Shown here one piece after another: positions 3,001 to 50,577 of a DNA stretch of 64,000 nt; position 1 is the first letter of the stretch, and each line of letters begins with the position of its first letter. Position numbers and translations under genes: made by a program. The notes under the pieces are model-generated. The model was not told where the DNA came from, did no database searches, and worked only from the letters and a program-made list of their open reading frames with translations. The stretch is from Oopsacas minuta. Taxonomy: Eukaryota; Animalia; Porifera. Where the stretch lies: positions 27,517-91,516 of the forward strand of contig JAKMXF010000019.1 in the NCBI GenBank assembly GCA_024704765.1. Direction: 5' to 3'.

Positions 3001-6000
3001 AAGAAAATGAACATTACTCGTCTGAACCATTCTATATATTTTGATTTTAAAACTACTCATTTTGGGTTTCAATCGGTTGAGACACTAATCTTAGGAAGTA
3101 TGTTTGAGTTGAATGAAGAAGATGGATTCTATGTACACAAGTTTGTTATATCTAATCACATTTCTAGTTTGAGGGAGGGCTTATCTGAAGTCCTCCTGGC
3201 TCAAATTCTCAAAAATATTTGTGTCTCTAATCGGTGAGTTTTTGCTATACACTCAACTCCTGTTATGTCTAACACGGATATATAAACACATACGGGAGTT
3301 GACTGTATTTATAATTATCTCACTTTGTAGTTCTCTACCAGTCGTACAGATGATTGAAGATGTCATGAAACAAGATTTTGAGGACTCACATATGCTCGAT
3401 CGTCTCCTCTCTCTTATAATGCACTATGAGACCCCTGTACACGAGGGATATGACGTGATAATACTCCGTGGACTCCCTGGCAGCGGAAAATCCACACTAA
3501 TAGAAAACTCAACCGAATGCAAAAACGGGAAATTATCAATTTGCAGTGCAGATAGTTTCTTCACAGATAATCTAACTGGAGAATACAGATTTGATATTAA
3601 CAAGCTGAGTACTGCACATTCTTCTTGTATGAACTTGTATCTAGAGAATCTAATCGGGAACAAATCACTGATTATTATTGATAACACAAACTCTCAATAT
3701 TGGGAATATTCTCTCTATAAATGTTTGGCGAAGTGTTTTGGGTACAGCTGCTCGGTTTTGGAGTTAATCTGTCCAGATGAAGATGTTCTCAAAGTATACC
3801 ATAAACGGAACAAACACAATGTTGGTTATGAAGTGTTGGTTGCTATGAGGAACCGTTGGGAATGTGATAATACAAGTGTTGTTATTAACCCCAAAAAGGT
3901 AAACAACAATTCTCTACTGAGCTTAGTTAGAGGCACAAAAAGTAAACACAAACAGGACACAATTCCTAATCTTACAACCATCTTATTCGCAGCTGTTTTT
4001 CTAACTCAATATTCATATAACACCCTCATACAACAATTCCCAGCTGTTTTTACAGACATCAAAGCTAGTCACATAACTCTACAATATAGACCCACGAGTA
4101 CAGACATAAACGAGTATAAACTAGGAAGTAATGTTGAGTTTACTGTCTTAGGGTGTGTTCAGGACGATAAGGTGCAGACAGTACCAGTTAAACTGCCCTC
4201 TGATATCAAATCAGAGAATTCACACCCTCATGTGACCATAAGTGTGTCCTCTATTGGAGCTGCTAAAGACTCAAACAATCTCCTAAACAAGATAGCTCGT
4301 ACCAAAAATATAAACGATCTTCCTAACAAACCTGACAATTTGGTACTGCGTGGTACAATAGGCTTACAAGTAGAGACAGCTGACGGACATATAAGGCGGG
4401 TATTTAATAGAACTGAATTGAACAGAGAAACATCCAATACTCCTAAACCCAAACCTACCCTCCCCTCTATAGATATATACACAGGACCATCTGACTACAT
4501 TACCCAGTTATACATCTTTGATCTTGATGGGACACTCATTAACACCCCTGGTCCTCTAGAGGGTCCCGGACAGTATGAGGTGTTAACTGGGACTGTCTGG
4601 CCCTATAACAAGTTTGTTATATACCCTGAGAGCTTGATATACCCCATGAGTACTCATTGTACCCCGGGACCAGGCCTCTTCCAATTCTTCTCTCACAAAT
4701 CGAGGGCCCAGAGTCTGACAGTAGTAATGACAGGGAGACTTCAGTCTATTAGCAATTCTGTCAGAGAGATTTTATCTAATTATAGTATCATTCCAGACGT
4801 GTTGCTATGTAAAGAGGACAATTCTCCCCTCCATACTCCGGAGTACAAGGCTTTGGAGCTTAGGAAACTTCTAGAACAATTCCCTCATGTAAAATACATT
4901 AAAATATGGGAGGATTTGGCTGAGAACCTAGCAGCATTTGCAAATATTACCCCAGATTATTTAGATAAGGAATTCGAGTTTATTGATGTGATTAGTTTCC
5001 AACAACAGTCTCATAAAAAAAAAAGTACTTCTGTGACACAAAAGAAATCTAAAGCTTATCAAACTGTTCGTGTTTATGGGAAAATACAGAGAAGTTCGTA
5101 TCATGATGCTGTAGAGAATACCATTAGCCTGATCTCGTCGCTATGGGCGAGTTGTATCAAGTATCAAGGGAAACCAGAGGATCTAGCTCACCCATTTGGA
5201 TCTTACCCTCTGAAACGAATGAGTGACATTGACTTATGTCTTTATGCACCTAGCAAAATGACAGTCATCGAGTGTATCACCCGTATGGAACAGCTGTTGG
5301 TCCAATGTGGTATCAATTGTATTCACACTTCTCAGCACTCAAGGGTACCCAGAATCCGGTTCCTCTGTCGCTATATGGGAACAACAGAGATCAGTTATGA
5401 TATCATTTTTATGAGAATGAATGAAATGAATGAAATTCCTAGTAAATTGAAGGAATTGAGAAAACTGATTCCTCCAGAAGATATCCCTTCTGTTACTGCT
5501 CTTGAAGGATTGGAATTTGTTAATAGAGTTAAACAAACACTAATAAAAGGTAAGCAATAATATTATTTGTTTATTTCAGAGGTTCACAACCTTTTTCACT
5601 ACGTATACCAATGTTAACACCTTCTATGGACACCCTGCTGTCCTCTGTGGACCACCAAGGATTCCATGTATCCCAGATTGGGAACCACGTGCCAGCCAAA
5701 GAACATACGGGGCCAGACATTTATATTTAGGGAAATATTATTTTTCTGGGAAGTAACATATTTGTATTTGCCTGGCAACCAAAAACGCTGGAGAATTCCA
5801 CATTTTGCCACGTTCTGGTTGGAACATAACACTCAGAATGTGTCATAATAGTGGCACAATGGCAGATTATGTCACATTTTAAATACATTATGTGTAGGTA
5901 TCTCTGAAGAAGACTTTGCAGCTGTTATAGAGCTAATAGTATTAATTCTACGTAGCAAACATCAAAAGGGAAATGCATTCCATTGCATCAGAACATTCCA

Positions 6001-10250: not shown

Positions 10251-11910
10251 ATGGCAGAGAAGTTAACAGACTCAGAAGGGAGAGAGGACTTGGTCTACAT
10301 AAAGACAGAGGATGGTAGCTACAGAGGCTGGAGGGTTGATTTGTTGATTAACAGGTTATCAAGCAAAATGGAAGAGAAATTATTGTTATGTAGCAGTTGT
10401 AAAGGAATGTTAAGAGATGCTTGTCTCTATGAGGGAAATTTGAGGTGTGGTGTGTGCATTCCTGAGGGTATAGCATGGCAACCAGTGAAGATGAATCGTG
10501 AAATAGTCTCCGATAAAATGGTAGTTTATTTGTTGTTATTTACAAATGTTTGTTTGTGTTTACAGATGAATTATTTATTTGTAGATTAGTTGTCCCCTAA
10601 AGAAGAGAGGGTGTGAATGGAGTGACACAGTGAGTACAGCAATACACCACCTGGAAGAATGTGAGTTCTTTCCTGTACTGTGTCCTCTGGGGTGTGTCTG
10701 TCTGGAAGGAGAGATGAAGGGGAAAGTTATGAAGCTGGAGAAGAGACGGATTCCAGAACATCAGAGAGACTCATGTCCCTTAAGAGAACTGGTGTGTGAA
10801 TTCTGTCTGAATAAAGTGAAGGCCTGTGAGATGAATCCTCATTTGGAGGACTGTGAGCACTTTCCAGTTCCTTGTCCTAATAGGTGTGTGATAGAAGGAG
10901 AGGAAGGGACCAGACAAGTTAAGAGAAGAGATGTTCCTGCCCATCTATCTAATGATTGTCCTCTACAAAAAGAAGAGTGTCCTTATTGGGTCTATGGGTG
11001 TAGAGAGGAAATAGAGAGGAAAGAGATGGATCTTCATGAAAGAGAATTCATGCACATTCACTACAGATTATCTATGACTGATATGAAACAGAAACAAGAT
11101 GAAACATCTGAACTATTGCAAGACAAACTTGATACAGCAACCGAGAGAATAGCATTCATAGAAAATGAAAATGAAAGTAAGAGCAAAGAGCTATTAACAT
11201 TGAAACAGAATCAAATAGAAACGAATGATCAACTGGATAGAGCAACTAAGAAGATTGCTTTCCTACAAAATGAAAATGAAAGTAAGAGCAAAGAGCTATT
11301 GACATTGAAACAGAATCAAATTGAAACATCTGAAGATAATAGACTACTGGCAGAGAAACTGGAAAAAGCAAATACCAAAATCGAGAATTTAGAGAAACAG
11401 ATTACTGAGAAGGATTCAGAACTGAAATCAATTAAAGAAGTACTCTATTCTCATACATCTCTACCTACAGGACAATTGGAATGGAAGATTAAAGGTGTAA
11501 AACAGAAGATACAAAATAAAGAGTCTACTTACAGTGATCCATTCTATGTAGGATTATACAAGTGTCAGGGCTGTATTATATGGAATTGTTTGAATAAAGG
11601 TAAAGTAGGTGTTTACATTTATATTATGAAAGGAGGTTATGATGATAAACTACACTGGCCTATCAGATACAAATATACGTTAATTATACTCAATCACATT
11701 AACAGTAATAATAATTATGAAATCACTAATCAAGTAACTAAGGAATATTTGGAGAAATATCCTGATTGCTTCAAGAGACCTACTCAGATGAGAAATATAA
11801 GTTTTGGAACTCATTCATTCATTTCAAACACTGAAATATTAGAAGCTAAATATTGTAAAGAAGACAGCATAACTCTTCTAATTAAAATAGAATTGTTACC
11901 AGCATTATAA
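10251..11910 (+). CDS. TRAF-like protein, copy 2 (intact, 531 aa); exons 10251-10520 and 10585-11910
   Basis: Same exon structure as copy 1, open frame, coiled coil with a duplicated 105-nt unit, MATH domain ending LLPAL. Confidence 0.92.
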
Positions 11911-16049: not shown

Positions 16050-17709
16050 ATGGCAGAGAAGATAACAGACTCAGAAGGGAGAGAGGACTTGGTCTACATA
16101 AAGACAGAGGATGGTAGCTACAGGGGATGGAGGGTTGATTTGTTGATAGACAAGTTATCAAGCAAAATGGAAGAGAAATTCTTGTTATGTAGCAGTTGTA
16201 AAGGAATGTTAAGAGATGCTTGTCTCTATGAAGGAAATTTGAGGTGTGGTGTGTGCATTCCTGAGGGTGTAGCATGGCAACCAGTGAAGATGAATCGTGA
16301 AATAGTCTCCGATAAAATGGTAGTTTATTTGTTGTTATTTACAAGTGTTTGTTTGTGTTTACAGATGAATTATTTATTTGTAGATTAGTTGTCCCCTAAG
16401 GAAGAGAGGGTGTGTATGGAGTGACACAGTGAGTAAAGCAATACACCACCTGGAAGAATGTGAGTTCTTTCCTGTACTGTGTCCTCTGGGGTGTGTCTGT
16501 CTGGAAGGAGAGATGAAGGGGAAAGTTATGAAGCTGGAGAAGAGACGGATTGCAGAACATCAGAGAGACTCATGTCCCTTAAGAGAACTGGTGTGTGACT
16601 TCTGTCTGAATAAAGTGAAGGCCTGTGAGATGAATCCTCATTTGGAGGACTGTGAGCACTTTCCAGTTCCTTGTCCTAATGAATGTGTGATAGAAGGAGA
16701 GGAAGGTACCAGACAAGTTAAGAGAAGAGATGTTCCTGCCCATCTATCTAATGAATGTCCTCTACAAAAAGAAGAGTGTCCTTATTGGGTCTATGGGTGT
16801 AGAGAGGAAATAGAGAGGAAAGAGATGGATCTTCATGAAAGAGAATTCATGCACATTCACTACAGATTATCTATGACTGATATGAAACAGAAACAAGATG
16901 AAACATCTGAACTATTGCAAGGCAAACTTGATACAGCAACCGAGAGAATAGCATTCATAGAAAATGAAAATGAAAGTAAGAGCAAAGAGCTATTAACATT
17001 GAAACAGAATCAAATTGAAACGAATGATCAACTGGATAGAGCAACTAAGAAGATTGCTTTCCTACAAAATGAAAATGAAAGTAAGAGCAAAGAGCTATTG
17101 ACATTGAAACAGAATCAAATTGAAACATCTGAAGATAATAGACTACTGGCAGAGAAACTGGAAAAAGCAAATACCAAAATCGTGAATTTAGAGAAACAAA
17201 TTTCTGGGAAGGATTCAGAACTGAAATCAATGAAAGAAGTCCTCTATTCTCATACATCTCTACCTACAGGACAATTGGAATGGAAGATTGAAGGTGTTAA
17301 ACAGAAGATAGAGAACGAAGAGGATACTTACAGTGATCTATTCTATGTAGGATTATACAAGTGTCAAGGGTATATTCAATGGAATTGTTTGGATACAGAT
17401 GAAGTAGGTATTTTCATTTATATTATGAAAGGAGATTATGATGATAAACTACACTGGCCTATCAGATACAAATATACGTTAATTCTACTCAATCACATTA
17501 ACAGTAATAATAATTATGAAATCACTGGTCATGTAACTAAGGAAGGTTTGGAGAAATATCCCGATATCTTCAAGAGACCTACTCAGCTGAGAAATAGAGG
17601 TTTTGGAATTCATTCATCCATTTCAAACACTAAAATATTAAAAGCTAAATATTGTAAAGAAGACAGCATAACTCTTCTAATTAAAATAGAATTGTTACCA
17701 TTTTTCTGA
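16050..17709 (+). CDS. TRAF-like protein, copy 4 (intact, 531 aa); exons 16050-16319 and 16384-17709
   Basis: Same architecture; doubled coiled-coil unit as in copy 2; ends LLPFF. Confidence 0.92.
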
Positions 17710-18628: not shown

Positions 18629-29909
<11,281 letters not shown>

Positions 29910-31828: not shown

Positions 31829-34800
31829 TTACAACTGTCCACCCCTCTCGATCTCATCCTTGTACGTCTGAACGAATGACACCACAGCTTTGTTGGGCCT
31901 GAGGTCCTTCTCATCTAGCTCCTTATAGGAGTATGGGTCATAATTCTTACCGGTCCTCAGGTGCTCTAGAATGGCCTCCTTCTCGTATGTCTCCCCATCT
32001 GGGGTAATTACTGGGTCAACGAATAGATCAAGGGTCAAGGGACACACTAGGTGCTTAGGGTAATTAACTTGTACCTCTTGGTCACTCCCTAGTAAGTCAA
32101 TACGTACATCTCTCTTGGTCCTAACACGTGCATTAATATCTGCATGGTCAAATGCCTTTTGAAGGTACATGTCTCTATGACACCTCAGCTCTGTAGCTTT
32201 CACACTATCTAGCGGATCATCAGGCTCCGCATCTATCAGTAATCCGTACACGTGGTTGAAGATATCTCCTATCCTGACACCTGGTGCATAGAACCTATCA
32301 AGAATAGTATGACATATTCTACCAGCACTGTTTATATTACAGTGATATATAGGAGTAATGAATCTTATGTTTGGAGGCTTGGATGGGTAATCATCTTTGA
32401 ATTCTACAAACAGCTCAAAGGTTGCTTCCTTATAAGGAGTGCCATCCGGACCGGACATGATGATCCTCCAGAAGTCTACGCTCTCCTCACAGGGGAACAC
32501 TTCAAATGCTGGATGTGGATGAAGATTGATAGTAGGAGAGCTCTTGGAGAATTCTTTTCGTAAAATCTGTGTTTATATTGCAAGCTAGGTGTTTATTGAT
32601 GAGTGCACGTGCTAAACATTTCTGAGCTGTTTGTACGGGTAAGTTTAATTTATCAGGGAGTATGTGATCCAATTGGGTATCAATAGGTTCTGCTGCCTGA
32701 GCTTCAAGGTTGATATCCTCTCCTGTCACATAAGCAGGTATACAATTAAGACGACTGTTCATTGATAGCATAGGTTCTTCTTCAAATATGTTAAGGAGTT
32801 CTTTCGTGTCTGTTGGTTTGAAGGAGTATCCTCCTGTAGCTTTCGCTATAGCATGGGTATCTACTACTTCTTCACATAGAAGGACACAGTCCATCGTCAC
32901 TTGGCTATCAATTAGCAGCTGAGCAGCCTCATCAGCTGTTACAGTGGAGTTGTTATCATAACCATCTGTTAGACACAAGATCCTCTTTGAAACGTCATGT
33001 AACTCAGGGTGTCGTGACACGAATTTATTCATTCTTTGTACTGCGAAACGTATCGCGTTATAGACAGATGTACTGTTACCAGGCGGGAATGAAGTGAATT
33101 CGCTGTTGAAGGCTCTAAAATTTTCTGATATGGGATATTGTAGTTTAGAATCTGTAGCGAATAAAGTTAATCCAATCACGTGTTTCAGATCGTAAGCAGT
33201 AGTCCTATTGCAAAATGCTTCAAAAGCCTCCACAACAGAATGGAACTTAGCTTTCCCGTCGAGATAAGGGAAGGTCATTGAACCGCTGACATCTAGCACC
33301 ACCATAATGATCTCCACGGGATCTCGGGTGATACCCTCCATCCCATGACTCATAACATTTGTCAAGGTTTTCAACTTCCTGAAACAGACTGGAGGATTTT
33401 CTTTGATCTGTCTATCCATGTCATCAGCGTCGAATAAGATAGATACCCCTGTTGTCACCTGGAAGTATACATGTGGTTTGTTTGGGTCTTTAGATGTGTC
33501 GATGTAAACACCGATATGACCATCATCTGTTGTTATCATTGTTGATTTCCTGCATTGTGGCGCCTTCACATTTAGGGGTGCTTGTACACATAATACGGAG
33601 TACTTGTCGGTTTTCCTTTCAAGGTTTTTCCATTCTCCGGTGAGGTCTATCCCACAGGTAGGAGCAGCTGTACATCTCCAGACAACAGCCTCGTCAGTAA
33701 TAAATGATTTTACCATACGTTTATAGTTGTAGAGATATTGTATCATTGTTAGCTCTGTTGATTCATTAAGTATAGATTTCTCTACGTAATGATCCATCCC
33801 GTTATTATCACGGACCTTTACTGGATCTGTCATACGCTGATGGGTCTCTGAGCAGGTTAGAGGGTATTTGTCGTACTTTTCTGTGTTCTGGTGGCCTGGT
33901 TTCGCGTGGTCTATGAAGTATACCCAAAAATAGTTTGAATATTCCGTTACCTGACTCGTTTCTATGGTTACCGTTCCAGGCATATGCAATTTAGGGGTTT
34001 TAGGTTTGATAACTTTGAAAATTTGTACTAAACATTCCTGTATAGCAACACGATGAGGAAGAGATAGGGCCTCCCTCGTGAAGAGGAGATGGAGGGAATG
34101 AATCAATGGGGGACACCCTGTGATACCCCTGAGGTGTCCTAAGGTGTTAAAAGGTATACCATTCCTGACCTGTTCTTGTTCCACCATCCAATCAGATAGC
34201 GCGTAAAGACAACTGAAGAAGAAAGAGGCCCCGTATGAACTCTGTTCCTTGTACCATGTTGGTTTGCATTCAGAAATATTAAAATTCTTATCTTTTCCCA
34301 AACTCCAAAAGTGTTTATTTGGTCTTATCTCTAGCGCCACTTGGTTACCAATATTTAAGTCACTCAGAACCACATCATTAGAAGAATACACTAGCGTATC
34401 GTCTCGATACAATTGTATCAAATGTCCCGGTATGCCAGTCATGTCCTGTATCCGTTTAATCAGCTGATAATACGTTGCTATGCTACAGTCCGTTTGTATA
34501 CCTCTTGGTTCTAATCCACATTCCTTATTCCTAATTAGAATAGTATCATTCCCTCTACACAATGTATCTGCCTGTGTGTACCTTGCTATCTTATCACTAT
34601 AGCATATTAACCTAGGGATAGCATAGACCATTGGAATGTCTGGGTATTCCTCCAAGCACCAATCAGATAGCTTGCTGATATAAGATATAGGCCTTGTTGC
34701 TAATGGATACCCCTCACATGTGTATAGTTCTACGGTCAAATCGTCCCCTAACTCATTATGCTCCTGCATGCAGATACGGTTAACTAGATCACAGTACAGA

Positions 34801-35469
34801 GTTTGGTTCGTGTTAAGAGGGCCTATAGTTCTCTTATCCGGGGTCTGGGTGGTTAGCAGCATATACTGGATGTCTAATTTCTCCCTACGAGTTTGCATTC
34901 TGTAAGCTTTATCGTTCATTTCACTCAGATCAGGCTCGATCTGGCTTAGACTTGGCGCGAAATTATTTACCTAAAATGGGTTAATTCATAACGTCATAGG
35001 AACAGATTCTAGTATTTTCCTGCAGCATTGTATACCGTGCAAGTTGCCTTGTTGTATACAATAAAATTACATCACGTATGGAGGACTTAATAGATTGAAT
35101 CTTGTCATTTGAGATCCGCTATCAACAGACTATGATTTCCCCTGACTGTTCAGATGTTAACTATCTATTTCAAATATGGATTTGAGACCGCCACTACGTA
35201 TGCGTATAATTTGCAAATATGTTCTTAATAAATATGATACTTAGTTACGCACTCACCTTTCCTCCAAACATTTCAGTGAGCTTTCTAAGGAATCTCTTCG
35301 CCTCCAGCTTTGTCATACAGATATCCTCTGTTAACATATTTAAGTCAAAGTCCACCAGATCGTCCATATTCCTAGTACCGACGAGTTTAAATGTATCCTC
35401 GTATTTTTCTAGCCCCTGAGCCTCAAGGAATTCCTTTAGGCCAACACCTCCTTTAGTATTAGTTGCCAT
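31829..35469 (-). CDS. SAM-Ubl-Ubl-helical-vWA-UBC(E2)-U-box protein A; exons 35257-35469 and 31829-34970; 1-nt frameshift near 32522
   Basis: SAM-like LKEFLEAQGLEKYEDTF..DLVD splices in phase 0 into ORF 32502-34919. Ubl-like LIKRIQDMTGIPGHLIQL; vWA VLDVSGSM..LTDG; E2 GPDGTPY..YPSKPP..YHCNINSAGRIC; U-box CPLTLDLFVDPVITPDGETYEKEAI. Confidence 0.82.
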
Positions 35470-35646
35470 AGAATTGATAGAATAATTACAAATCGATGTA
35501 AATCACATTTAAATAGGATGGCCTAATACCTGGAACTTGATATGACGCTATATTTAGTGTATATGTCCTGTGGGAATACTCACATTACTCATCTCATATC
35601 TTTCTGAATAGTTAATACATTGAAATTAAATGTTATTCCTGCATTC

Positions 35647-38600
35647 ATGGATAAAATCGATTTATTTTTGGAGAAGGTACGTCTCACTGAGTATAGAGAG
35701 AGGTTTATACCTCAGGTCAGTGATGTGTTTGAGTTTAGAAAGTATTTAAAGGATCCAGAGTCTCTGAGACAGCTCGTAGGGCTGTCTAAGCTTGAGGTTA
35801 AGAGGTTTGTGAGACTATGTGAACCAACTCTTCAGGTTAGTGACATACAATAAGCTATCTTAACACATGTATGAACCATCTGGTATTTGTGTCTACTGCA
35901 TATGACGAATAGTAGTTTGTTAGAATGTTAACAAATTCATTCAATTAATATTAGTACTGTTGTTTGTAGGAAATGAATGTACAAACTATTTCAACTGATC
36001 CTCCTCCCCCTATCACACCTGATACTCATGTTACTACAAACACCTCAGAGGTGTTATATCTAAACATTAAACTCTTGGATCTAGAAGGTGTCATCCTTGA
36101 TAAGAGGTTCCCTATACAGGTTAACAAATCAATTCTCTATTATCAGCTGGTTGATAGTATTCATAAGGTGTTAAAGAATGAAACTAATAAAATTAGCTTT
36201 AGAAGTATTGAAATATATTCTAAGACAGGTTACCCTCTTGCTAACAGTCCAATGGTGTTTGTGAGACCAATTTCTGAGTGGTTCCTGCAACAAAATGAAT
36301 TATTGTATGTTTACCAAAAGGTGTTAAGTCATAAATATGAGTTTGTGAGTGATGTAGATGCTAAGGGGACTGTAGTGACCATCCAGCTAAGAAATAGTAC
36401 TTCTAAATTCTCATTCAAATTCTATCAGGAATTCGTATTTGTTTGTGATTTGAAGACAGCTCTGTCGCTTGAATTACACATTCCTTATGATTCATTGACA
36501 ATCTGGGGGCTCAATGAATACACAAATATCGAAGAGGAGGTAGTCGAGAATGAAGAAGTAAAACTGAGCACTATTCCCCAACGTAAACTACAATTCTCTA
36601 TAGCGAGTGAATATAACGGAACTGAATTTCTAGATAGTTTTAATACTAAACTTTACTCATCTTGTACTTCTAATTACCTCGCTCACTTCAACATATTCAA
36701 TTCACGTCTGTTGTATCTGGTGAAGGAGCATGTGCATACAGGGGATAGAGATAGGTTGAAACAGAGATTAGGACTTATTAGAAAGATCTCATGTTCTCCT
36801 CCTTTAGTCTATGCTCTCTTTCTGTTATTCTCTGAATCAGCTGTAACTCTACCTCATAGAGTAGCCATTAATGAAGGGATAATAACTACAGTATCCTTAC
36901 TGGATAGTAAAGTGGATCAATCTCCTATCTCACATTTCCCAGAGCTTTGGTTACATATTGAAGAACATGTAGAGGCTAACCACGCTATCTCTGAGAATTA
37001 TGAGACTACTTTCATTTCCAAACGGACTAGAGAGAGTCCTAAGGACGATGAGATGCGTCGACTTATCGGGGCCTTCCCTCCCAACCAAGAGACTGTAATT
37101 ACATGGAGAGACATCTCCACAGTCCATGAGGCTTATAGCTACATTCCTAAGACACAGTTACACCATTTCTCATCTGAAGTTTTATCAAGATTCCCGTTAC
37201 ATCATCCTATGGAGTTATACAGGAAATATATTGAAGAGAAGGTCCCTTATGGATTAATGTTACCTCTAATTAATGGGTTAAGTAATCCCTGTGTGTTCCT
37301 AGGAAGGACTAATGGTAAATACGGATACTTTGATTATTTCTCTCCAGAAGATGGTATCTGTCATTCCTACAATCCTTATGATATTACGATAGCCAAAAAA
37401 TTAGAGATTTCTAACACTAAGCAACACCCTAAGATTATAATTATCCTGGATATTAGTGCTGATATGAATTTATTCTTTGAAGAATACACACAGCCTAAAC
37501 ACGGTGAACCTAATCTTGTCTTATCACAAGTTGATGCTGCTCTATTCCTTATAGAGATGCTTGTCAACCGTCTTATAGGATTGGAATGCAAGTATTTACT
37601 AGGTGCTATGGTCATGTCTAATGATTACGAGTTCCCCAATGGGATCTTCGAGTTACACAAACCAACCTTTGAGTATGTTTCTGTTTTGAATAAACTGAAA
37701 GAAGCTGTTAATAAATACAAACCAAATCCAATTCCAATAAGAAGGCTCCCTAATGGCATAATAATGAATGCATTGGAATTCTGTATTGACAACTATTATA
37801 GTCCCAGTAAACACCTCCAAACTAAGATATATCTATTTACAAATGCTGCTACTAACAATAAGTATTATGGAGCGAAGACTAACTCATTTGAACGAAAATT
37901 ACAAAAATCTTATTGTATGCTAAGCAGCATAGTTATGTCACGCGATTTCGCACACAATCTGGCAAGACTTTCCAAATTATCTAATGGCCTCCTTTTAAAC
38001 TTTCCTACCTTAACTAAACATATTTCAACAACAGGTACAGGGAGTATTACAACTCATCTATGTTTGGAGTATGGTTCATATATCGAGGATAGATTATTAC
38101 CTATGACAGAGATACAGGACTCTACATACAATAAACTTTCAATTCAACTCTCTAACAAGCTAATAACAACAGAAGAATTTTTCGAAACTTCACAACAACA
38201 AAGACAGGAATATGAAGAAATGTTCCATCACGGTAATTTGTATAGCTTACACATTCTACGTAGAGTGAGTGCATACGCCAGGAGTCCTAATCCTTATTGT
38301 AAAATATACACAAAACACGACAATATATTAAATTGGTTTATATTCATACAAGGACCTAGTAACACCCCTATGAGAACAGTGTTCTTATTTTAGAAATGGT
38401 TTTTGGAGAGAGATTTCCACTTTTCCCGCCTAAACTGAGATTTCTAACTATTCTCTATCATCCAAATGTGACCACTTCTGGTCTTGTGTGTCATCCAATC
38501 ATATTTGAGGATTACACTACTGACGTCACATTACGTCAAATAATTGACAGCATTTATTCAATGCTAATTGAACCAATCAAAAGTCATTCTGTGAGAAGTA

Positions 38601-38983
38601 AGGTGTTAGAAATAGCTTTGATGTATAAACAGCTGTACAAACAAACAGTCAGTAATTTGTTGTTAATTACATGTCTGACTGACAGAAGTATTGCAACAAT
38701 TGAGGAAGATTTCCACGTCAAATCTAACTCTAAATCTGTAACACATCCTCCCGCGTTAATGTGTACCCTTACTACTCAGTTATTCGACACCCCAGTTATC
38801 ACTCCTGATGGTAACACCTATGAGAGACTAGCTATACTACAGCATATCAAGGACAAGGGTACAGATCCTATTACTAACACCGATCTGGACCCTCAAGATT
38901 TGCTACCTAATCCAGCTATAGCTAACGCTGTGCTTAAATATAAGCGGAAGATATTTGCACGTAGTTATTGGTGGGAAGATTAG
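35647..38983 (+). CDS. SAM-Ubl-Ubl-helical-vWA(degenerate)-UBC(E2)-U-box protein B; exons 35647-35835 and 35970-38983; 1-nt frameshift near 38368
   Basis: SAM-like IDLFLEKVRLTEYRERF; shares GYPLA and PPL..LFLLF..LPHRVAI.E with A; E2 QGPSNTP(Y)E..FPPKLRF..YHPNV..GLVC; U-box CTLTTQLFDTPVITPDGNTYERLAI. One added C in aacacccc restores the frame. Confidence 0.8.
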
Positions 38984-41278: not shown

Positions 41279-44200
41279 ATGCCTACAAACTCTAAGAAAG
41301 TGTTATATTTGGGGAATTGTGTTGAGGACCTCCATAAGCTAGGAGAAGTCGATATCCCCCGGGATTCCGACCCTGAGAAACACCTGAAAGTGGCAGAGAA
41401 GGCTTTCAGTAAAGCAGAAGAGCTCTGGATAGAAGGAGACGAGGAGAAATCATTCGTCCTGTTTATGCGATATATTAACTCAGTTGAAAAATGTAAAAAA
41501 ACATATAATTACTCAAAATCACCTTCCAAGTTTAATCAGCTGATATCAATAGAGAAGTTTATGACATCAATTGACAGGTGTGAAGGTCTAAAGGTTCAGT
41601 TACAGAAGAGATATAAGGAAAAGAAATCATCTCAAGAGAACCTGTCCAAACCGGCTCTAACACCGAAACCAGCTGAGGTCCAAGAGGAGGTGAAGGGTCC
41701 ATTTGTTACCCCGAGTGATGCCTACTCGCTTCTATCAGCTAAGCCCCCTCTAGCTGTTGTTATTGATTGCAGAAGTGTCAAAGACCGGAACCAAGGGATT
41801 ATTATCAAGCTACCAGTCATATTCCTTCCAACTGATAAGCCTTTATTATCTACTTCCCTATCTTATATCAAACTGGAATTATCACGTATCAATATGAAAC
41901 TAAACAGTGTCCTGTTGGTCCTGATGGATGCAGACTCACAGGAACTAACAGCTGGTGTTGATAAACCAGTACTAGAACTAAGAGACACTTTATATAAATT
42001 CGATACAAATAATGAACTTAAGGAGGCACCAAGGATATTAGATGGAGGATATGAATCTTGGAAATTACATTATCCAATGTTTTCAGATGGTTCCAGTTCC
42101 AAATTGGTTGATATATCTACACCAAATGATGAGGTAATATTTCCTACGATTGATTCGCCAACTCGTAAACAGTGTGAAAATATTTTCACACCAGAAGTGT
42201 CAACAAATGGTGATAATTCTATTGATGAATTAGCCAATGAAATTAGAGACTCTTTGTTACCTACTCAAAATGTTGTTGAATCAGATTTAGTTCCAGTTAA
42301 TGACACCTCACCTCCTACTATCCCACCTAAACCATCTCACCTATCAGCCAATAAGATTCCTCCTTCTACAGTTCAGAATATTTTAGCTCCAGAACCAATT
42401 TCATCTATAGTTCCAGAACCAAATTCATCTATAGTTCCAGATGTAACCAATCACATCCCTCCCTCACTAGATATCCCTAATCCCCGGGTATCAATTGGTC
42501 CCATTCCTAGTCCGCCTTCATATGAGACAGCTGTCTCTCTACCCCGTGCTTCCGTGCCTCCTGTCCCCCTACCTCCTCCAATATCACGTCCTCCTGATCC
42601 CATACTAGCTCCTATTCCTGTCATACCAGAACCAACAGTAAGAATTCCTCCAGAAAATCAGCTGACTCAAGAATCAGCTATTACTCCACAACAGCTGGAA
42701 GCTAATAAGGTGTCAGAACAGATGGAGATAGAACTCCAGGAGAAGGAGATGAGACTCAGGGCCCTGGAGTCTGAACTAGCCAGGAAGGACCTATTGGAGG
42801 AGAAGGTACGAGTCCTTGAGCAGCAGTCTGGGGCTGAAGCAAGAGACATCGAGTTACAGAAACGCCGAATGTTAGAGGAGATCGCTAACGAGAAACAGAG
42901 AGCTGATCAAGAGCTAATAGCTAAACAACATCAACTAATAGCTCTGGAACAACAAACAAAACAACAACTGAGACAGGAAATGGAGAGCATAAATATAGAA
43001 AAGGGGAACATCCTACAGGAGAAGACAAAACTGGACATGGAGAAGAGACAGGTCGCAGAGGGTAAAATGCAATTGGAAAGAGAAAAATTCGAATTTGAGA
43101 GAGTGAAGCGATTAGTTTTAGAACAACAAAAGCAGGCACAACAATCACAAGCATCTAATCCCTCTCACCACTTCACACCTGAGCAGACTACCGTTCCTCA
43201 GATGCAATTAAATCACGGACTCCCCGTCGGCTGGAGGAAACTATTCGACTCTCCGACCGGACGGTTCTACTATCAAGACGACACAACTAAAACGACACAT
43301 TGGAACCCTCCAACCTCTTGGATTGTGTCACAACAGCCCAATATTATGCAGGGAAAGACCAAAGGAGCTTTATTGAGCTCTTTCAACCAGAACGACACAA
43401 TTAAACACACACCCGCATCAGGTCAAACCCCCGTATTTGATAGGTCAACTAAACCAACACCTAAGACACCGGAAATACCATCACGTGCTACAAAAAACCC
43501 CGCACTTTCAAATCCTTACTACCCACAAATCCTCGCTCGCATCCAATCGAAATCAAAATCTCGAGCCTTCGATCCTTCCTATGGGGGCATGGGACAAGCA
43601 CTCACGGGTCTTAAGAACCTGGGTAACACTTGTTTCATGAATTCTATAATTCAGTGTCTGTCTGCCGCATATCCACTAGCGGAATACTTCATATCTCTGA
43701 GGTTTATTCAACATGTCAATCCTGTCAACCCCCTTGGAATGGGAGGCGAGATAGCAGAGGAGTTCGCCTTCCTTGTTCAAGCGCTATGGAGGGGTAACTA
43801 TAAGAGTATCGCCCCCAAGGACTTTAAGAGGGTGCTGTCTAAGTTCGCCCCCCAATTTTCTGGTACACAACAACACGATTCTCAGGAATTCCTTGCATTT
43901 CTATTGGATGGATTACATGAGGATTTAAATAAGGTGTTAAGAAAAGAGTATATATTGGAACAGGACAATCAAGGGGTGCCAGATGTAAAGGCCTCCCAGA
44001 TTTCCTGGGAGAACCATCTCAAACGAAACGATTCCATAATTGTCGACCTCTTCCAAGGACAGTTTAGATCCACTTTAACTTGTCTAAAATGTGGATTTTC
44101 TTCGGTAACTTTCGAGGCATTCATGTACTTATCTGTCCCAATCCCTGGTTCAGCTAATGTAACGCTAATAGATTGTGTGAAACAATTCACAAAGGTGGAA

Positions 44201-44626
44201 AAGGTGTCAGGTAGTAACAGCTGGTTTTGCGCGCGTTGTAAAACACACAGGGAGTCAGCTAAACAGCTGGAGATATGGCGCCTACCTCCTGTCCTTCTTA
44301 TACACCTCAAAAGATTCTCATACGTCGGAAAATGGAAACAGAAATTGGACACAAACGTTAATTTCCCCCTATCCGGTTTGAATTTAGCACCCATGACACT
44401 TGGACCTCTTAAACCCACAGAATACCAACTATTCGCCGTATCAAACCATTCAGGGAACCTTGAAGGGGGACACTATACCGCGTACGTGCGTCATGCGTCG
44501 AACAAGAAGTTTTATACCTTTGACGACAGTGTAGTGCGAGATATGTCCACCTCCAGTGTCCTGACAAAGAACGGATATATGTTATTCTACACCTCAGTAG
44601 ATTTCACACCTAAGTTGAAATTGTGA
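41279..44626 (+). CDS. USP8: Ubiquitin carboxyl-terminal hydrolase 8 (MIT, rhodanese, Pro-rich, coiled coil, WW, USP), intronless
   Basis: GDEEKSFVLFMRY (MIT); VIDCRS..ILDGGYESW (rhodanese); GLKNLGNTCFMNS (Cys box), QHDSQEFL, NHSG..GGHYTAY (His box). Confidence 0.95.
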   Translation: MPTNSKKVLYLGNCVEDLHKLGEVDIPRDSDPEKHLKVAEKAFSKAEELWIEGDEEKSFVLFMRYINSVEKCKKTYNYSKSPSKFNQLISIEKFMTSIDRCEGLKVQLQKRYKEKKSSQENLSKPALTPKPAEVQEEVKGPFVTPSDAYSLLSAKPPLAVVIDCRSVKDRNQGIIIKLPVIFLPTDKPLLSTSLSYIKLELSRINMKLNSVLLVLMDADSQELTAGVDKPVLELRDTLYKFDTNNELKEAPRILDGGYESWKLHYPMFSDGSSSKLVDISTPNDEVIFPTIDSPTRKQCENIFTPEVSTNGDNSIDELANEIRDSLLPTQNVVESDLVPVNDTSPPTIPPKPSHLSANKIPPSTVQNILAPEPISSIVPEPNSSIVPDVTNHIPPSLDIPNPRVSIGPIPSPPSYETAVSLPRASVPPVPLPPPISRPPDPILAPIPVIPEPTVRIPPENQLTQESAITPQQLEANKVSEQMEIELQEKEMRLRALESELARKDLLEEKVRVLEQQSGAEARDIELQKRRMLEEIANEKQRADQELIAKQHQLIALEQQTKQQLRQEMESINIEKGNILQEKTKLDMEKRQVAEGKMQLEREKFEFERVKRLVLEQQKQAQQSQASNPSHHFTPEQTTVPQMQLNHGLPVGWRKLFDSPTGRFYYQDDTTKTTHWNPPTSWIVSQQPNIMQGKTKGALLSSFNQNDTIKHTPASGQTPVFDRSTKPTPKTPEIPSRATKNPALSNPYYPQILARIQSKSKSRAFDPSYGGMGQALTGLKNLGNTCFMNSIIQCLSAAYPLAEYFISLRFIQHVNPVNPLGMGGEIAEEFAFLVQALWRGNYKSIAPKDFKRVLSKFAPQFSGTQQHDSQEFLAFLLDGLHEDLNKVLRKEYILEQDNQGVPDVKASQISWENHLKRNDSIIVDLFQGQFRSTLTCLKCGFSSVTFEAFMYLSVPIPGSANVTLIDCVKQFTKVEKVSGSNSWFCARCKTHRESAKQLEIWRLPPVLLIHLKRFSYVGKWKQKLDTNVNFPLSGLNLAPMTLGPLKPTEYQLFAVSNHSGNLEGGHYTAYVRHASNKKFYTFDDSVVRDMSTSSVLTKNGYMLFYTSVDFTPKLKL

Positions 44627-49032: not shown

Positions 49033-50577
49033 TCAAAAGGTCTCGTCCATGGACAGAGAATGCGAATAACAGTGATTGGGTCGCCGATGAGAGCTTAGCT
49101 CCGCTTGGCTCGAGCTCTGAGGCCGCTGTCCAGGGTTCCTCTGGAGCTCAAAATCATCGAGGGAGAAAATCGAAAGCGTGTCGGGGAGCTGGAACACCTC
49201 AGTTCCGAGGGAATAAAAATATGGGTGGTTAAGCGCGTCACATGCACTGATACGCTTGGAGGAGTTATACAAAAGGAAGCTATAAAGGAGGGATAGCCCG
49301 GCTGGATCCAGACGAGGCGCCAAATGTCTGAGAGGCTCTGGCGGGTATTCAGGGAATTTCCCGTTTATGAACTCTTTATTTCTAGAAATCCCCGGCCAAA
49401 CATCTTCATTTGGCGTCCCTAAAATCCGCCAGATTAAAATAAGTTCTTCATCTACGCTCGACCCTGGGAACAATGGACGTCCTGATGTCATCTCACAAAA
49501 TATACACCCCACCCCCCACATATCAATCGATGAATCATACGTCACAGACCCAAGCAACACCTCTGGAGGACGATACCATAACGTGACCACTTCTGAGCTA
49601 TACGTTTTAGTTGGAACACTTTTCGCCCTGGCTAAGCCAAAATCTGCCAATTTCAAATCACCTGTTCTCCCAATGAGTAGGTTCTGCGGTTTCAAATCTC
49701 TGTGGAGGATTTTCTTAGAATGGCAATACTTTAGCCCGCGTAACAACTGAAACAACAACAACTGGACATTCCTCATGTTCATAAAATTCCCACATTCCTC
49801 AAGATACTGCTTCAGGTCGCGCTCTACAAATTCAAATACCAATGTCAACGATCGATCGGTTTGGACTTTATCATAAAGGGTGACAATATTCGCATGTTTG
49901 AGGTTTCTTAAGAGGGATATTTCTCTGATAGCCGTGCACGGCGCGCCCTCTTCATGTTCCAGGCGGATCTCCTTGAGAGCCACGATCCCCTGGGTGAGTG
50001 TACTCTTGCCCTTGTAGACGGTCGCATAGGTACCTTCGCCCAATTTCTCGAGTTTGGTGTAAGTGTCCAAACGTCCGAAACCCAGCTCCGTAAGTGAGGT
50101 GCGCCTCTGTCGACGGGACATCTGACGGAAGGAGGGATCGTTCCAAGGAGCGTTAGAAGATACGGACATAGGACTAACGGGGGCCGAGTCGATACCACTT
50201 AACGGGGACGGGGGCACTGAATGTGTGGATATGAGTCTATGTGTGTGTCCGGGACGAGCGGGAGACCCGTCTAGGATATGAATAGGGGTGAGGGGATGGT
50301 CTCGACATAGGGAAGAGGACAGGGACTGTCTTTTCTTATCACAACAAGTAGCATGCGAAGCGGACTTACTTAGAAAACGACGGTCCTTAGAACGCATGCC
50401 GGATCTAGACGGGACCGGGGTGGATTGATCGACACTAAGGGACCTGTCTGGGAATAGTTTGGGGAACATCATAGGGGTGGAGGGGAGTGGAGGATCAGAG
50501 AAACCCCCGGAAGAGGTCGAATTGTGTCGCGACTTGTTTTTAAATGGAAAATTAAAATGGCGTTTCAACTTCTCCAT
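49033..50577 (-). CDS. PCTAIRE-family cyclin-dependent kinase (CDK16/17/18-like), intronless
   Basis: [57 protein letters not shown]. Confidence 0.96.

What the first reader, a model, noticed from the sequence alone, without database searches (positions are those of the whole stretch)
31829..38983. Head-to-head pair of SAM-Ubl-vWA-E2-U-box genes: self-contained ubiquitin ligases
Seen: two divergent paralogues (about 1,117 and 1,067 aa after frame repair) start only 177 bp apart, each with a SAM-only first exon and a phase-0 intron. Each has Ubl-like folds, vWA, an E2 with its catalytic Cys (HCN..RIC; HPN..LVC) and a C-terminal U-box. Known: E2 and U-box E3 are normally separate proteins, SAM domains oligomerise or polymerise, and vWA domains bind ligands via MIDAS. 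I recall vWA-E2 fusions only as uncharacterised proteins. Inference: a sensor-to-ubiquitination machine in one chain that probably works as an A/B pair, like head-to-head paired immune receptors.
Basis: partly seen in the sequence, partly recalled or inferred. Interest (0 to 1): 0.86.

Follow-up and report, generated by a model that had tools for sequence, protein, structure and literature searches.

The report
Paired single-chain E2–U-box ligase genes
Two neighbouring glass-sponge genes, read outward from a shared 177-base gap, each encode one long protein that carries both a ubiquitin-conjugating enzyme and a ubiquitin ligase domain; the protein family proves widespread but untested, and the linked, unequal A/B pair is peculiar to glass sponges.

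Summary
The window is Oopsacas minuta, a glass sponge. Gene A (minus strand, 1,117 aa) and gene B (plus strand, 1,067 aa) start 177 bp apart. Each has a SAM-type first exon, a phase-0 GT-AG intron and one long exon.

Both apparent frameshifts are errors of the reference. Read contigs from all runs that cover the sites drop one T at 32522/23 and add one base at 38364-38368, which restores both frames. Contigs of an RNA-like run join both SAM exons to the long exons.

The core is not sponge-specific. Full-length relatives occur in teleosts, lamprey, ciliates and other protists. One fish member is named "bifunctional E2/E3 enzyme R795", and a Hokovirus (giant virus) protein matches the N-terminal module. 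I found no experimental work on the family.

New here: glass sponges split the gene into an ancestral-like A type and a fast-evolving B type. B has a changed MIDAS, no internal U-box and an altered E2 loop, but keeps the catalytic Cys and the U-box. A and B stay adjacent and were duplicated together.

Physical A/B cooperation and an immune role remain untested. The scan noted a similar tandem pair elsewhere in this genome.

The parts
35257..35469 (-). Gene A exon 1 (71 codons): SAM domain
   Evidence: Pfam SAM_1 E 6.2e-5 (23.7 bits, cut-off 23) and SAM_2 1.7e-4. It equals the first 71 aa of NCBI model P0001.
34971..35256 (-). Gene A intron, phase 0, GT..AG
   Evidence: Read directly from the sequence. 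An X4 contig joint runs 34970 to 35258 with one replaced letter. X4 depth falls to about 200 here against 1,000-5,000 on the exons.
31829..34970 (-). Gene A exon 2 (1,046 codons after removing the surplus T), stop at 31829-31831
   Evidence: The ortholog P0002 (72% identical) is uninterrupted.
34326..34877 (-). Gene A tandem ubiquitin-like domains (Ubl1 34608-34877, Ubl2 34326-34547)
   Evidence: AlphaFold model m6c4063f099c0, pLDDT 90.7. Foldseek matches linear di-ubiquitin and ISG15 at E 4e-6 and weaker. VIA-align gives Z 10.8, rmsd about 2 Å, for Ubl2.
33882..34238 (-). Gene A helical domain carrying the family's most conserved motifs (LGHxR, GCPPL, LPHRVAIxE)
   Evidence: No significant match to a solved fold.
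33669..33881 (-). Gene A internal U-box/RING-like domain, absent from gene B
   Evidence: Foldseek probability 0.97 to the E4B U-box. VIA-align Z 5.0-5.8 to the Ufd2, CHIP and TRAF6 RING domains. hhalign against the family's own C-terminal U-box gives 96.9%, E 1.4e-10. The Chromera homolog has a Pfam U-box at the same place. B has 47 residues here against 77 in A.
33399..33572 (-). Gene A small beta-barrel (Tudor/CarD-like, tentative)
   Evidence: VIA-align Z 4.5-5.2, rmsd 2.1-2.8 Å, which is weak.
32781..33308 (-). Gene A vWA domain with complete MIDAS (DxSxS...T...D)
   Evidence: Pfam VWA_2 6.6e-10 and VWA 1.2e-8. MIDAS conservation is shown. The vWA profile hits Rpn10 at 2.6e-7.
32522..32523 (-). 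Reference error in gene A: one surplus T
   Evidence: All four runs leave out one base here. The corrected reading equals ortholog P0002 across the break.
32153..32561 (-). Gene A UBC (E2) domain: HCN at 32336-32344, catalytic Cys at 32312-32314
   Evidence: Pfam UQ_con 5.7e-31. Closest solved structures are a Plasmodium E2 (3e95, 1.5e-25) and UBE2D3/E2.
31856..32059 (-). Gene A C-terminal U-box
   Evidence: Pfam U-box 1.4e-14.
35470..35646 (.). 177-bp gap between the two ATGs; presumed bidirectional promoter
   Evidence: The orthologous pair in L001 has a 202-bp gap. The two gaps barely align.
35647..35835 (+). Gene B exon 1 (63 codons): divergent SAM-like domain
   Evidence: BLAST to A's SAM gives E 4e-5. 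Pfam SAM_TNK E 0.12 here, and 0.0017-0.006 in other B-type genes; all are below the cut-off. NCBI model P0047 starts with this exon.
35836..35969 (+). Gene B intron, phase 0, GT..AG
   Evidence: An X4 contig joint skips 134 bases with GT..AG ends.
35970..38983 (+). Gene B exon 2 (1,004 codons after adding the missing base), stop at 38981-38983
   Evidence: The ortholog P0050 (1,017 aa) is uninterrupted.
37422..38084 (+). Gene B vWA-like domain with an altered metal site (DxSxD...G...N)
   Evidence: No Pfam hit. hhalign to the A-type vWA gives 96%, E 3.4e-9. The substitutions are conserved across B-type genes.
38364..38368 (+). Reference error in gene B: one base missing in a C run
   Evidence: X1 and X3 insert a C behind 38364; X4 inserts a T behind 38367. 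Either change restores the frame.
38247..38653 (+). Gene B UBC (E2) domain: HPN at 38459-38467, catalytic Cys at 38489-38491
   Evidence: Pfam UQ_con 6.2e-19 on the part after the break. The loop after the active site has lost the canonical PDDPL motif.
38747..38944 (+). Gene B C-terminal U-box
   Evidence: Pfam U-box 8.9e-15.

Best explanation
Shown:
- These are two intact, spliced, expressed genes of Oopsacas minuta.
- They belong to an old, patchily distributed eukaryotic family. Its core is an N-terminal di-Ubl/helical/U-box-like module, a vWA domain and a UBC domain with an HCN motif, usually followed by a C-terminal U-box.
- Sponge members carry a SAM domain in front of this core; in the one fish member scanned no SAM was found.
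- Glass sponges duplicated the gene into two types. The A type keeps the ancestral features. The B type sits on a long branch and evolves about 2.6 times faster. It has a changed MIDAS, has lost the internal U-box and has an altered E2 loop, but keeps HPN, the catalytic Cys and the U-box.
- The two types have stayed neighbours through speciation, inversions and further duplications.

Inferred mechanism:
- Each chain is charged by E1 on its own UBC cysteine. A tethered U-box, its own or that of a partner chain, activates the thioester. No separate E2 or E3 would then be needed.
- The vWA domain (through its MIDAS in A) and the N-terminal module bring in the substrate or an activating ligand.
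- The SAM domain concentrates the chains into oligomers.
- The 177-bp shared upstream region gives co-expression of A and B.
- A and B most likely work in one assembly, with A as the canonical enzyme and B as a specialised or modulating subunit.
For: Integrity, splicing and expression:
- Read contigs correct both frame breaks and join both SAM exons to the long exons. In run X4 exon depth is 5-10 times intron depth.
- The NCBI gene models agree on the SAM exons.

Domains.

Family breadth:
- 1,168 cluster representatives score E <= 1e-30. That count also takes in partial architectures such as vWA+E2 without a C-terminal U-box.
- Full-length matches include Coilia and Labeo (teleosts), Lampetra, Blepharisma, Paramecium, Trimastix and Nonionella.
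- AlphaFold DB cluster representatives contain the same N-terminal module; the two that carry a name are UBC-core proteins.
- A Hokovirus E2 of 1,329 aa also matches.
- Among the wider hits scanned, 85 of the 130 E2 motifs found read HCN and 116 of the 120 MIDAS motifs found read DxSxS. A is therefore the ancestral state.

A/B history:
- The A clade (support 99) and the B clade (support 100, stem length 1.97) are sisters (support 96), and their subclades mirror each other.
- A+B adjacency is seen in the window and in L001, L002, L003, L005 and L006.
- Fourteen contigs hold both an A-type and a B-type hit; for the eleven whose members are in the tree, the A and B subclades match.

Conservation in B: the catalytic Cys, HPN and the U-box are conserved across B-type genes.
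Against: - There is no biochemical evidence for any member of the family. I found no paper on it.
- Whether the U-box can reach its own E2 could not be examined.
- E1 and U-box bind overlapping faces of an E2 (established knowledge), so a tethered U-box could hinder recharging as easily as help.
- B's E2 lacks the PDDPL loop that helps lysine attack in canonical E2s, so B may be a poor enzyme.
- Two of eight loci (L004, L007) show an A-type gene with no B within 8 kb.
- The runs come from one sample and one study and are probably the data the assembly was built from.
- The splice joints rest on contig sides of only 27 letters.
Confidence: 0.6

Rival explanations
1. A and B are independent enzymes. 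They are neighbours only because they arose by local duplication in a compact, slowly rearranging genome. At most the shared gap gives co-regulation, and there is no joint complex.
For: Local duplicates are born adjacent. Some A-type genes stand without a B (L004) or beside another A (L007). The orientation of the pair is not fixed: head-to-head, tail-to-tail and tandem all occur. The intergenic DNA is hardly conserved between orthologous pairs. Non-sponge members apparently work as single genes.
Against: The A/B split predates the divergence of Oopsacas from the sponge carrying the Vazella pourtalesii-type gene (L003). Adjacency nevertheless survives in several subclades and through inversions. 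The pair was duplicated as a unit at least once, with matching subclades on eleven contigs. B's coordinated losses (MIDAS, internal U-box, E2 loop) look like division of labour rather than decay.
Confidence: 0.3
2. B is not a working ligase. It is a regulatory or decoy subunit, a pseudo-enzyme comparable to an E2 variant, that tunes or inhibits A.
For: B sits on a very long stem (1.97) and has about 2.6 times A's branch length between the same two species. Three of its five MIDAS positions are changed. The internal U-box is deleted. The E2 loop after the active site has lost PDDPL.
Against: HPN, the catalytic Cys-His and nearly all U-box signature residues are conserved across B-type genes. 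That is not expected of a dead enzyme. B's substituted MIDAS residues are themselves conserved, which points to a changed function rather than a lost one.
Confidence: 0.25
3. The two genes are recent pseudogenes, each disabled by a frameshift in its E2 domain.
For: The reference sequence has one frame break in each gene. NCBI truncates A at 893 aa.
Against: Every run that covers the sites contradicts the reference at both places and restores both frames. The assembly is a PacBio/Illumina hybrid (PMC10280926). Apart from the single break each, no stop interrupts the 1,117 and 1,067 codons. The orthologs are intact. Both genes are transcribed and spliced.
Confidence: 0.03

Closest known systems
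'Bifunctional E2/E3 enzyme R795' family (named after Mimivirus R795; database annotation, not experimentally characterised to my knowledge)
   Same: One chain carries vWA, a UBC core and a U-box. The fish protein P0106, which bears this name, is a full-length hit of the family profile (E 8e-144) with the HCN motif and an intact MIDAS. A Hokovirus E2 of 1,329 aa shares the N-terminal module.
   Different: The sponge genes add an N-terminal SAM domain. They exist as two differentiated types, A and B, kept side by side. I could not fetch R795 itself, so the link rests on an automatic name and on the Hokovirus structural match.
UBE2O and BIRC6 (E2/E3 hybrid enzymes)
   Same: A UBC domain is embedded in a large multidomain chain that recruits substrates itself and needs no separate E3 (abstract of PMC12818219).
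   Different: According to that abstract they act E3-independently, whereas these chains carry one or two U-box domains. These proteins also have vWA, di-Ubl and SAM domains. No sequence relationship beyond the UBC fold was seen.
Plant RGLG1/2 (copine-type vWA plus RING E3)
   Same: An intracellular vWA domain is coupled to a RING-superfamily E3 domain in one chain (papers listed; otherwise from my own knowledge).
   Different: RGLG proteins have no E2 domain and a RING rather than a U-box. Homology beyond the domain classes was not tested.
WDSUB1 and sponge SAM-U-box proteins (Marín 2010, PMC3087547)
   Same: SAM and U-box occur in one animal protein. Sponge variants with SAM plus U-box are described, as is a Monosiga vWA-plus-U-box protein.
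   Different: Those proteins have no UBC domain, no di-Ubl module and a different domain order. Their relationship to this family was not tested.
Engineered E2-RING fusions used in structural work (for example RING1B-UbcH5c 4r8p, BRCA1-UbcH5c 7jzv)
   Same: An E2 is covalently tethered to a RING-type domain. These entries appear among the closest solved E2 sequences.
   Different: They are artificial constructs. Here the tether is natural, about 25-30 residues long, and conserved across eukaryotes.
Head-to-head paired immune receptor genes (paired NLRs of plants)
   Same: Two diverged paralogues share a short upstream region, one conservative and one fast-evolving (analogy only, from my own knowledge).
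   Different: There is no homology and no evidence of immune function or of physical pairing. In other glass-sponge loci the orientation is not fixed.

Membership tests
Ubiquitin-conjugating enzyme (UBC/E2) superfamily | UBC fold recognised by a profile | tested here: met
   Pfam UQ_con: A 5.7e-31, B 6.2e-19. A's UBC/U-box part has its closest solved relatives among UBC enzymes (3e95, 1.5e-25).
Ubiquitin-conjugating enzyme (UBC/E2) superfamily | Catalytic cysteine downstream of an HPN motif | tested here: met
   A has HCN...RIC, keeping His and Asn with Pro replaced by Cys. B has HPN...LVC. Both are conserved within their types. HCN is the commonest form in the family: 85 of the 130 motifs found.
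Ubiquitin-conjugating enzyme (UBC/E2) superfamily | Thioester formation with ubiquitin after E1 | not testable with these tools
   This needs an in vitro charging assay.
U-box E3 ligases | U-box domain recognised by a profile, with the signature residues | tested here: met
   Pfam U-box: A 1.4e-14, B 8.9e-15. The CPLT...DPV...G.TYER.AI...DP...L.PN pattern is conserved in both types.
U-box E3 ligases | Stimulates discharge of an E2~ubiquitin thioester | not testable with these tools
   This needs a biochemical assay. Inter-domain geometry was not available from the structure tool.
vWA domains with a metal-ion-dependent adhesion site | vWA fold recognised by a profile | tested here: met
   A: Pfam VWA_2 6.6e-10, and the A-type profile hits Rpn10 and bacterial vWA structures. 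B: no Pfam hit, but hhalign to the A-type vWA gives 96%, E 3.4e-9.
vWA domains with a metal-ion-dependent adhesion site | Complete MIDAS (DxSxS, Thr, Asp) | tested here: inconclusive
   Met in A (DVSGS...T...TDG). Not met in B, which has DISAD...G...TN, three of five positions changed in a conserved way. Metal binding itself was not tested.
SAM domains | SAM fold recognised by a profile | tested here: inconclusive
   A: SAM_1 at 23.7 bits against a cut-off of 23, so met. B: only sub-threshold SAM hits (E 0.12; 0.0017-0.006 in other B-type genes) plus BLAST E 4e-5 to A's SAM.
R795-like bifunctional E2/E3 family (vWA-UBC-U-box) | vWA, UBC and U-box in this order in one chain, with the shared N-terminal module | tested here: met
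   Pfam shows the same order in fish, lamprey, ciliate and sponge members. The N-terminal module recurs in AlphaFold DB cluster representatives, two of them named UBC-core proteins, and in a Hokovirus E2. The named fish member P0106 is a full-length profile hit.
R795-like bifunctional E2/E3 family (vWA-UBC-U-box) | Direct homology to Mimivirus R795 itself | not tested
   R795 could not be fetched. The viral-contig scan returned only stand-alone E2 genes.
Papain-like or USP-type deubiquitinases (considered for the middle module) | Fold match above noise and a conserved Cys/His catalytic pair | tested here: not met
   VIA-align Z is only 5.0-5.8 and Foldseek probability <= 0.09. Cys62 is Ser in B and absent in about half of the other lineages. 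His82 is Gln in most non-sponge members.

The most novel reading that the evidence does not exclude
In glass sponges the A and B chains form an obligate hetero-oligomer, held by their SAM and/or U-box domains. The fast-evolving B chain, with its remodelled vWA site, acts as the specificity or sensor subunit, and the conservative A chain acts as the ubiquitin-writing executor. On this reading it is a two-gene, self-sufficient ubiquitination switch, analogous to paired immune receptors and wired to TRAF-type signalling. Three things point that way: TRAF genes lie nearby in this window, a TRAF gene lies between B and A in L005, and a B-type N-terminal module is fused to TRAF zinc fingers in P0080.
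Probability: 0.15. Interest if true: 0.85.

Novelty: new variant of a known kind. Interest (0 to 1): 0.6.

Why it matters
E2 and E3 are almost always separate proteins, and the known natural hybrids (UBE2O, BIRC6) are described as acting without an E3. A conserved natural tether between a UBC domain and a U-box is present in lineages as far apart as ciliates, lampreys and teleosts, yet has never been studied. It would give a minimal system in which one polypeptide, with E1, may write ubiquitin.

The family also poses a direct question about how a tethered E3 domain coexists with E1 recharging on the same face of the E2.

The glass-sponge A/B pairs add a natural experiment. One copy kept every ancestral feature. 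The other remodelled its metal site, lost a U-box and changed its active-site loop. Even so, the two stayed linked and were co-duplicated, which invites a test of division of labour.

On a practical level, the work corrects two frameshift errors in the O. minuta reference that truncate or distort both gene models.

Tried and rejected
1. Pseudogenes: rejected, because read contigs restore both frames.
2. Short introns at the frame breaks: rejected, because the UBC sequence is continuous across both breaks and matches the orthologs.
3. A protease or deubiquitinase fold for the conserved middle module: only noise-level matches, and no conserved Cys/His pair.
4. A talin FERM-like reading of the N-terminal module: TM-score 0.13 and rmsd about 25 Å, caused by the Ubl parts only.
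5. A solved relative of A's vWA by single-sequence search: none. The A-type profile did find Rpn10 and bacterial vWA domains.
6. The B-type vWA profile against solved structures: only insignificant BABAM1 hits, E 0.45.
7. Full-length giant-virus homologs in viral contigs: only stand-alone E2 genes of 150-270 aa came back.
8. A conserved promoter element in the 177-bp gap: the orthologous gaps barely align, and the bacterial-type promoter scan does not apply.
9. Literature on the architecture: seven full-text searches found no study of it. They did find Marín 2010 (a Monosiga vWA+U-box protein) and the UBE2O paper.
10. The reviewed-UniProt (Swiss-Prot) AlphaFold library: only polyubiquitin matched.


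Full report
**What is in the sequence**

The window is from the glass sponge Oopsacas minuta. The 822-aa product of the long minus-strand exon, together with a 71-aa upstream exon, equals NCBI protein LOD99_10138 (P0001, 893 aa) exactly.

Gene A lies on the minus strand. Exon 1 is 35469..35257, a GT-AG intron spans 35256..34971, and exon 2 is 34970..31829. Gene B lies on the plus strand. Exon 1 is 35647..35835, the intron is 35836..35969, and exon 2 is 35970..38983. Both introns are phase 0, and the two ATGs are separated by exactly 177 bp.

A and B are distant paralogues. They are 21% identical over the N-terminal 800 residues and 33% over the C-terminal 200. Their first exons are weakly similar (E 4e-5).

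**The frame breaks are reference errors**

Each long exon changes frame once, inside the UBC domain. I laid the contigs of four public runs from one O. minuta sample on 32450..38449.

- All four runs leave out one T at 32522/23.
- At the run of C's at 38365-38368, X1 and X3 add a C behind 38364, X4 adds a T behind 38367, and X2 does not cover the site.

Both changes restore the frame. For A, the corrected reading across the break is the same as in the 72%-identical ortholog P0002. The genome paper describes a PacBio/Illumina hybrid assembly (PMC10280926), so leftover indels are plausible.

These runs probably include the data behind the assembly. Because they contradict the assembly, that lack of independence does not weaken the point.

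**Splicing and expression**

Run X4 behaves like RNA. Its depth is 1,000-5,000 on exons, about 200 in A's intron and about 390 in the gap. X1-X3 are flat. X4 has contig joints at 34970|35258 (one letter replaced) and 35835|35970 (GT..AG), exactly the predicted junctions. The flanks of those joints are only 27 letters. However, both NCBI models also begin with the SAM exons. A Vazella pourtalesii Trinity transcript (P0033, 1,150 aa) carries SAM through U-box in one open reading frame.

**Domain anatomy**

Pfam finds SAM, vWA, UQ_con and U-box in A. In B it finds only UQ_con and U-box.

An AlphaFold model of A's region between SAM and vWA is confident (pLDDT 90.7, pTM 0.90).

- *Ubl domains.* Two beta-grasp domains match linear di-ubiquitin and ISG15 (Foldseek E from 4e-6; VIA-align Z 10.8 for the second).
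- *Helical domain.* It holds the family's most conserved motifs.
- *Internal U-box-like domain.* A second model of the remaining 325 residues (pLDDT 89.6) has no significant whole-module match. Residues 143-201 are U-box/RING-like by two aligners (probability 0.97 to the E4B U-box; Z 5.0-5.8 to Ufd2, CHIP, TRAF6 RING). A profile of this segment matches the family's own C-terminal U-box (96.9%, E 1.4e-10). In the Chromera homolog the same position is a clear Pfam U-box (3e-17).
- *Small beta-barrel.* It follows the internal U-box and resembles Tudor/CarD domains only weakly.

A's full order is therefore SAM, Ubl, Ubl, helical domain, internal U-box-like domain, beta-barrel, vWA, UBC, U-box.

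Weak papain/deubiquitinase-like matches (Z 5-6) are at noise level. The candidate Cys and His are not conserved outside the A type, so I reject a protease reading.

**The family is old and wide**

A profile of 59 full-length sponge sequences was searched against 1.84 billion cluster representatives. It found 1,168 proteins at E <= 1e-30, including partial architectures such as vWA+E2.

- Full-length matches with vWA, UQ_con and U-box in the same order come from teleosts (Coilia, Labeo), a lamprey, ciliates (Blepharisma, Paramecium), Trimastix and a foraminiferan. Further O. minuta paralogues also match.
- AlphaFold DB cluster representatives contain the same N-terminal module; two of them are named UBC-core proteins (best E 2e-26).
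- The Atlas has a 458-member cluster with this architecture.
- The Labeo protein is named "bifunctional E2/E3 enzyme R795" after a Mimivirus protein. A 1,329-aa Hokovirus E2 shares the module.
- HCN in place of HPN, and an intact DxSxS, are the family norm (85 of the 130 E2 motifs and 116 of the 120 MIDAS motifs found).

Seven literature searches found no functional study. The nearest items were a Monosiga vWA-plus-U-box protein noted by Marín (PMC3087547) and the statement that UBE2O and BIRC6 are the only two E2 enzymes known to act without an E3 (PMC12818219).

**What is special in glass sponges**

In a 64-sequence tree the hexactinellid A-type genes (support 99) and B-type genes (support 100, stem length 1.97) are sister clades (support 96). 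They stand apart from the vertebrate, ciliate and other sponge members. It is a quick-search tree with some long branches, so deep placements are provisional.

B-type genes differ from A-type genes in a consistent way:

| Feature | A type | B type |
|---|---|---|
| MIDAS | DxSxS...T...D | DxSxD...G...N |
| Internal U-box-like segment | 77 residues | 47 residues |
| Loop after the active site | PDDPL | lost |
| E2 motif | HCN | HPN |
| Catalytic Cys-His | kept | kept |
| C-terminal U-box signature | kept | kept |

B's vWA-like region is still homologous to A's (96%, E 3e-9). Between the same two species B has diverged more than A: 55% against 72% identity, and path length 0.80 against 0.31.

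**Linkage**

| Locus | Arrangement of A and B |
|---|---|
| Window | head-to-head, 177 bp |
| L001 (ortholog in another sponge) | head-to-head, 202 bp |
| L002 (O. minuta LOD99_14351/14352) | head-to-head |
| L003 (Vazella-type) | tail-to-tail |
| L005 | same strand, with a TRAF gene between |
| L006 (LOD99_725 and its neighbour) | tandem |
| L004, L007 | no B within 8 kb |

Fourteen contigs hold both an A-type and a B-type hit. For the eleven whose members are in the tree, the subclades match (A-i with B-i, A-ii with B-ii), so the pair was copied as a unit. I conclude that linkage has been maintained, most simply for co-regulation. Physical cooperation is a reasonable but untested next step.

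**How it most likely works**

- *Shown:* both chains carry an E2 core with its active-site residues and a U-box with its signature residues. The two domains are joined by a linker of about 25-30 residues. A has a complete metal site in its vWA.
- *Inferred:* E1 charges the UBC cysteine. A U-box, in cis or from a neighbouring chain in a SAM-driven oligomer, activates the thioester. The vWA and the N-terminal module select the target or receive an activating ligand.
- *A known constraint:* E1 and RING/U-box domains use overlapping faces of an E2. A permanently docked U-box would therefore block recharging. That favours either a dynamic tether or action in trans, for which an A/B assembly would be a natural setting.

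I put 0.6 on [quoted passage not shown]. I put about 0.3 on A and B being functionally independent. I put about 0.15 on the strong sensor/executor, immune-type reading.

**Limits**

- There is no biochemical evidence.
- No inter-domain or multimer prediction was possible.
- One sample supplied all the reads.
- The taxa behind most ENA proteins are unknown.
- R795 itself was not retrieved.

Noticed in passing
window 35705-35741 (inside gene B exon 1): In the three DNA-like runs X1-X3, contigs stop at 35741 or start at 35705, and at least 255 letters continue that do not match the window. This could be a second haplotype with an insertion, or a rearrangement in the SAM exon of B. The RNA-like run crosses the area.
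   Followed up: no
window 38364-38368: The base that restores B's frame differs between runs: C in X1 and X3, T in X4. That gives Pro or Leu at this codon, possibly two alleles.
   Followed up: partly
window 41279-44626 (+): The next gene downstream of B is a 1,115-aa USP8-like deubiquitinase (USP8 dimerisation domain, WW, UCH; E 1e-75). A ubiquitin eraser thus sits beside two ubiquitin writers.
   Followed up: partly
window 10630-11910 and 16429-17709 (+): Two 426-aa TRAF genes (TRAF zinc fingers plus MATH) belong to an array about 18 kb from the pair. A TRAF-zinc-finger gene also lies between the B-type and A-type genes in L005.
   Followed up: partly
protein P0080 (ENA contig of 105,677 bp, another glass sponge): A single 690-aa ORF joins a B-type N-terminal module (40% identical to window B over 330 residues) to TRAF-type zinc fingers, in place of vWA-E2-U-box. 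The module is therefore portable and linked to TRAF-type signalling.
   Followed up: partly
L001 2895-3711 (-): An extra fragment with A-type similarity (about 180 bits) lies about 2.5 kb beyond the B gene of the orthologous pair. It is probably a remnant of another copy.
   Followed up: no
O. minuta contig JAKMXF010000044 (L002 and nearby): LOD99_14356 (P0095, 1,153 aa: SAM, ubiquitin, vWA, UQ_con, U-box) lies a few genes from the LOD99_14351/14352 pair. It belongs to a different, non-A/non-B branch of the family.
   Followed up: partly
window 24274-25398 (-) and 49033-50577 (-): A cathepsin L-like cysteine protease with propeptide (E 2e-64) and a 514-aa protein kinase flank the region. There is no evident link to the pair.
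   Followed up: no
internal U-box-like domain of family members P0126 and P0147 (and, in the alignment, P0124 and P0158): In some non-sponge members the internal domain carries paired CxxC motifs, as a zinc-binding RING or SP-RING would. In sponge A-type genes it is U-box-like, without them.
   Followed up: partly
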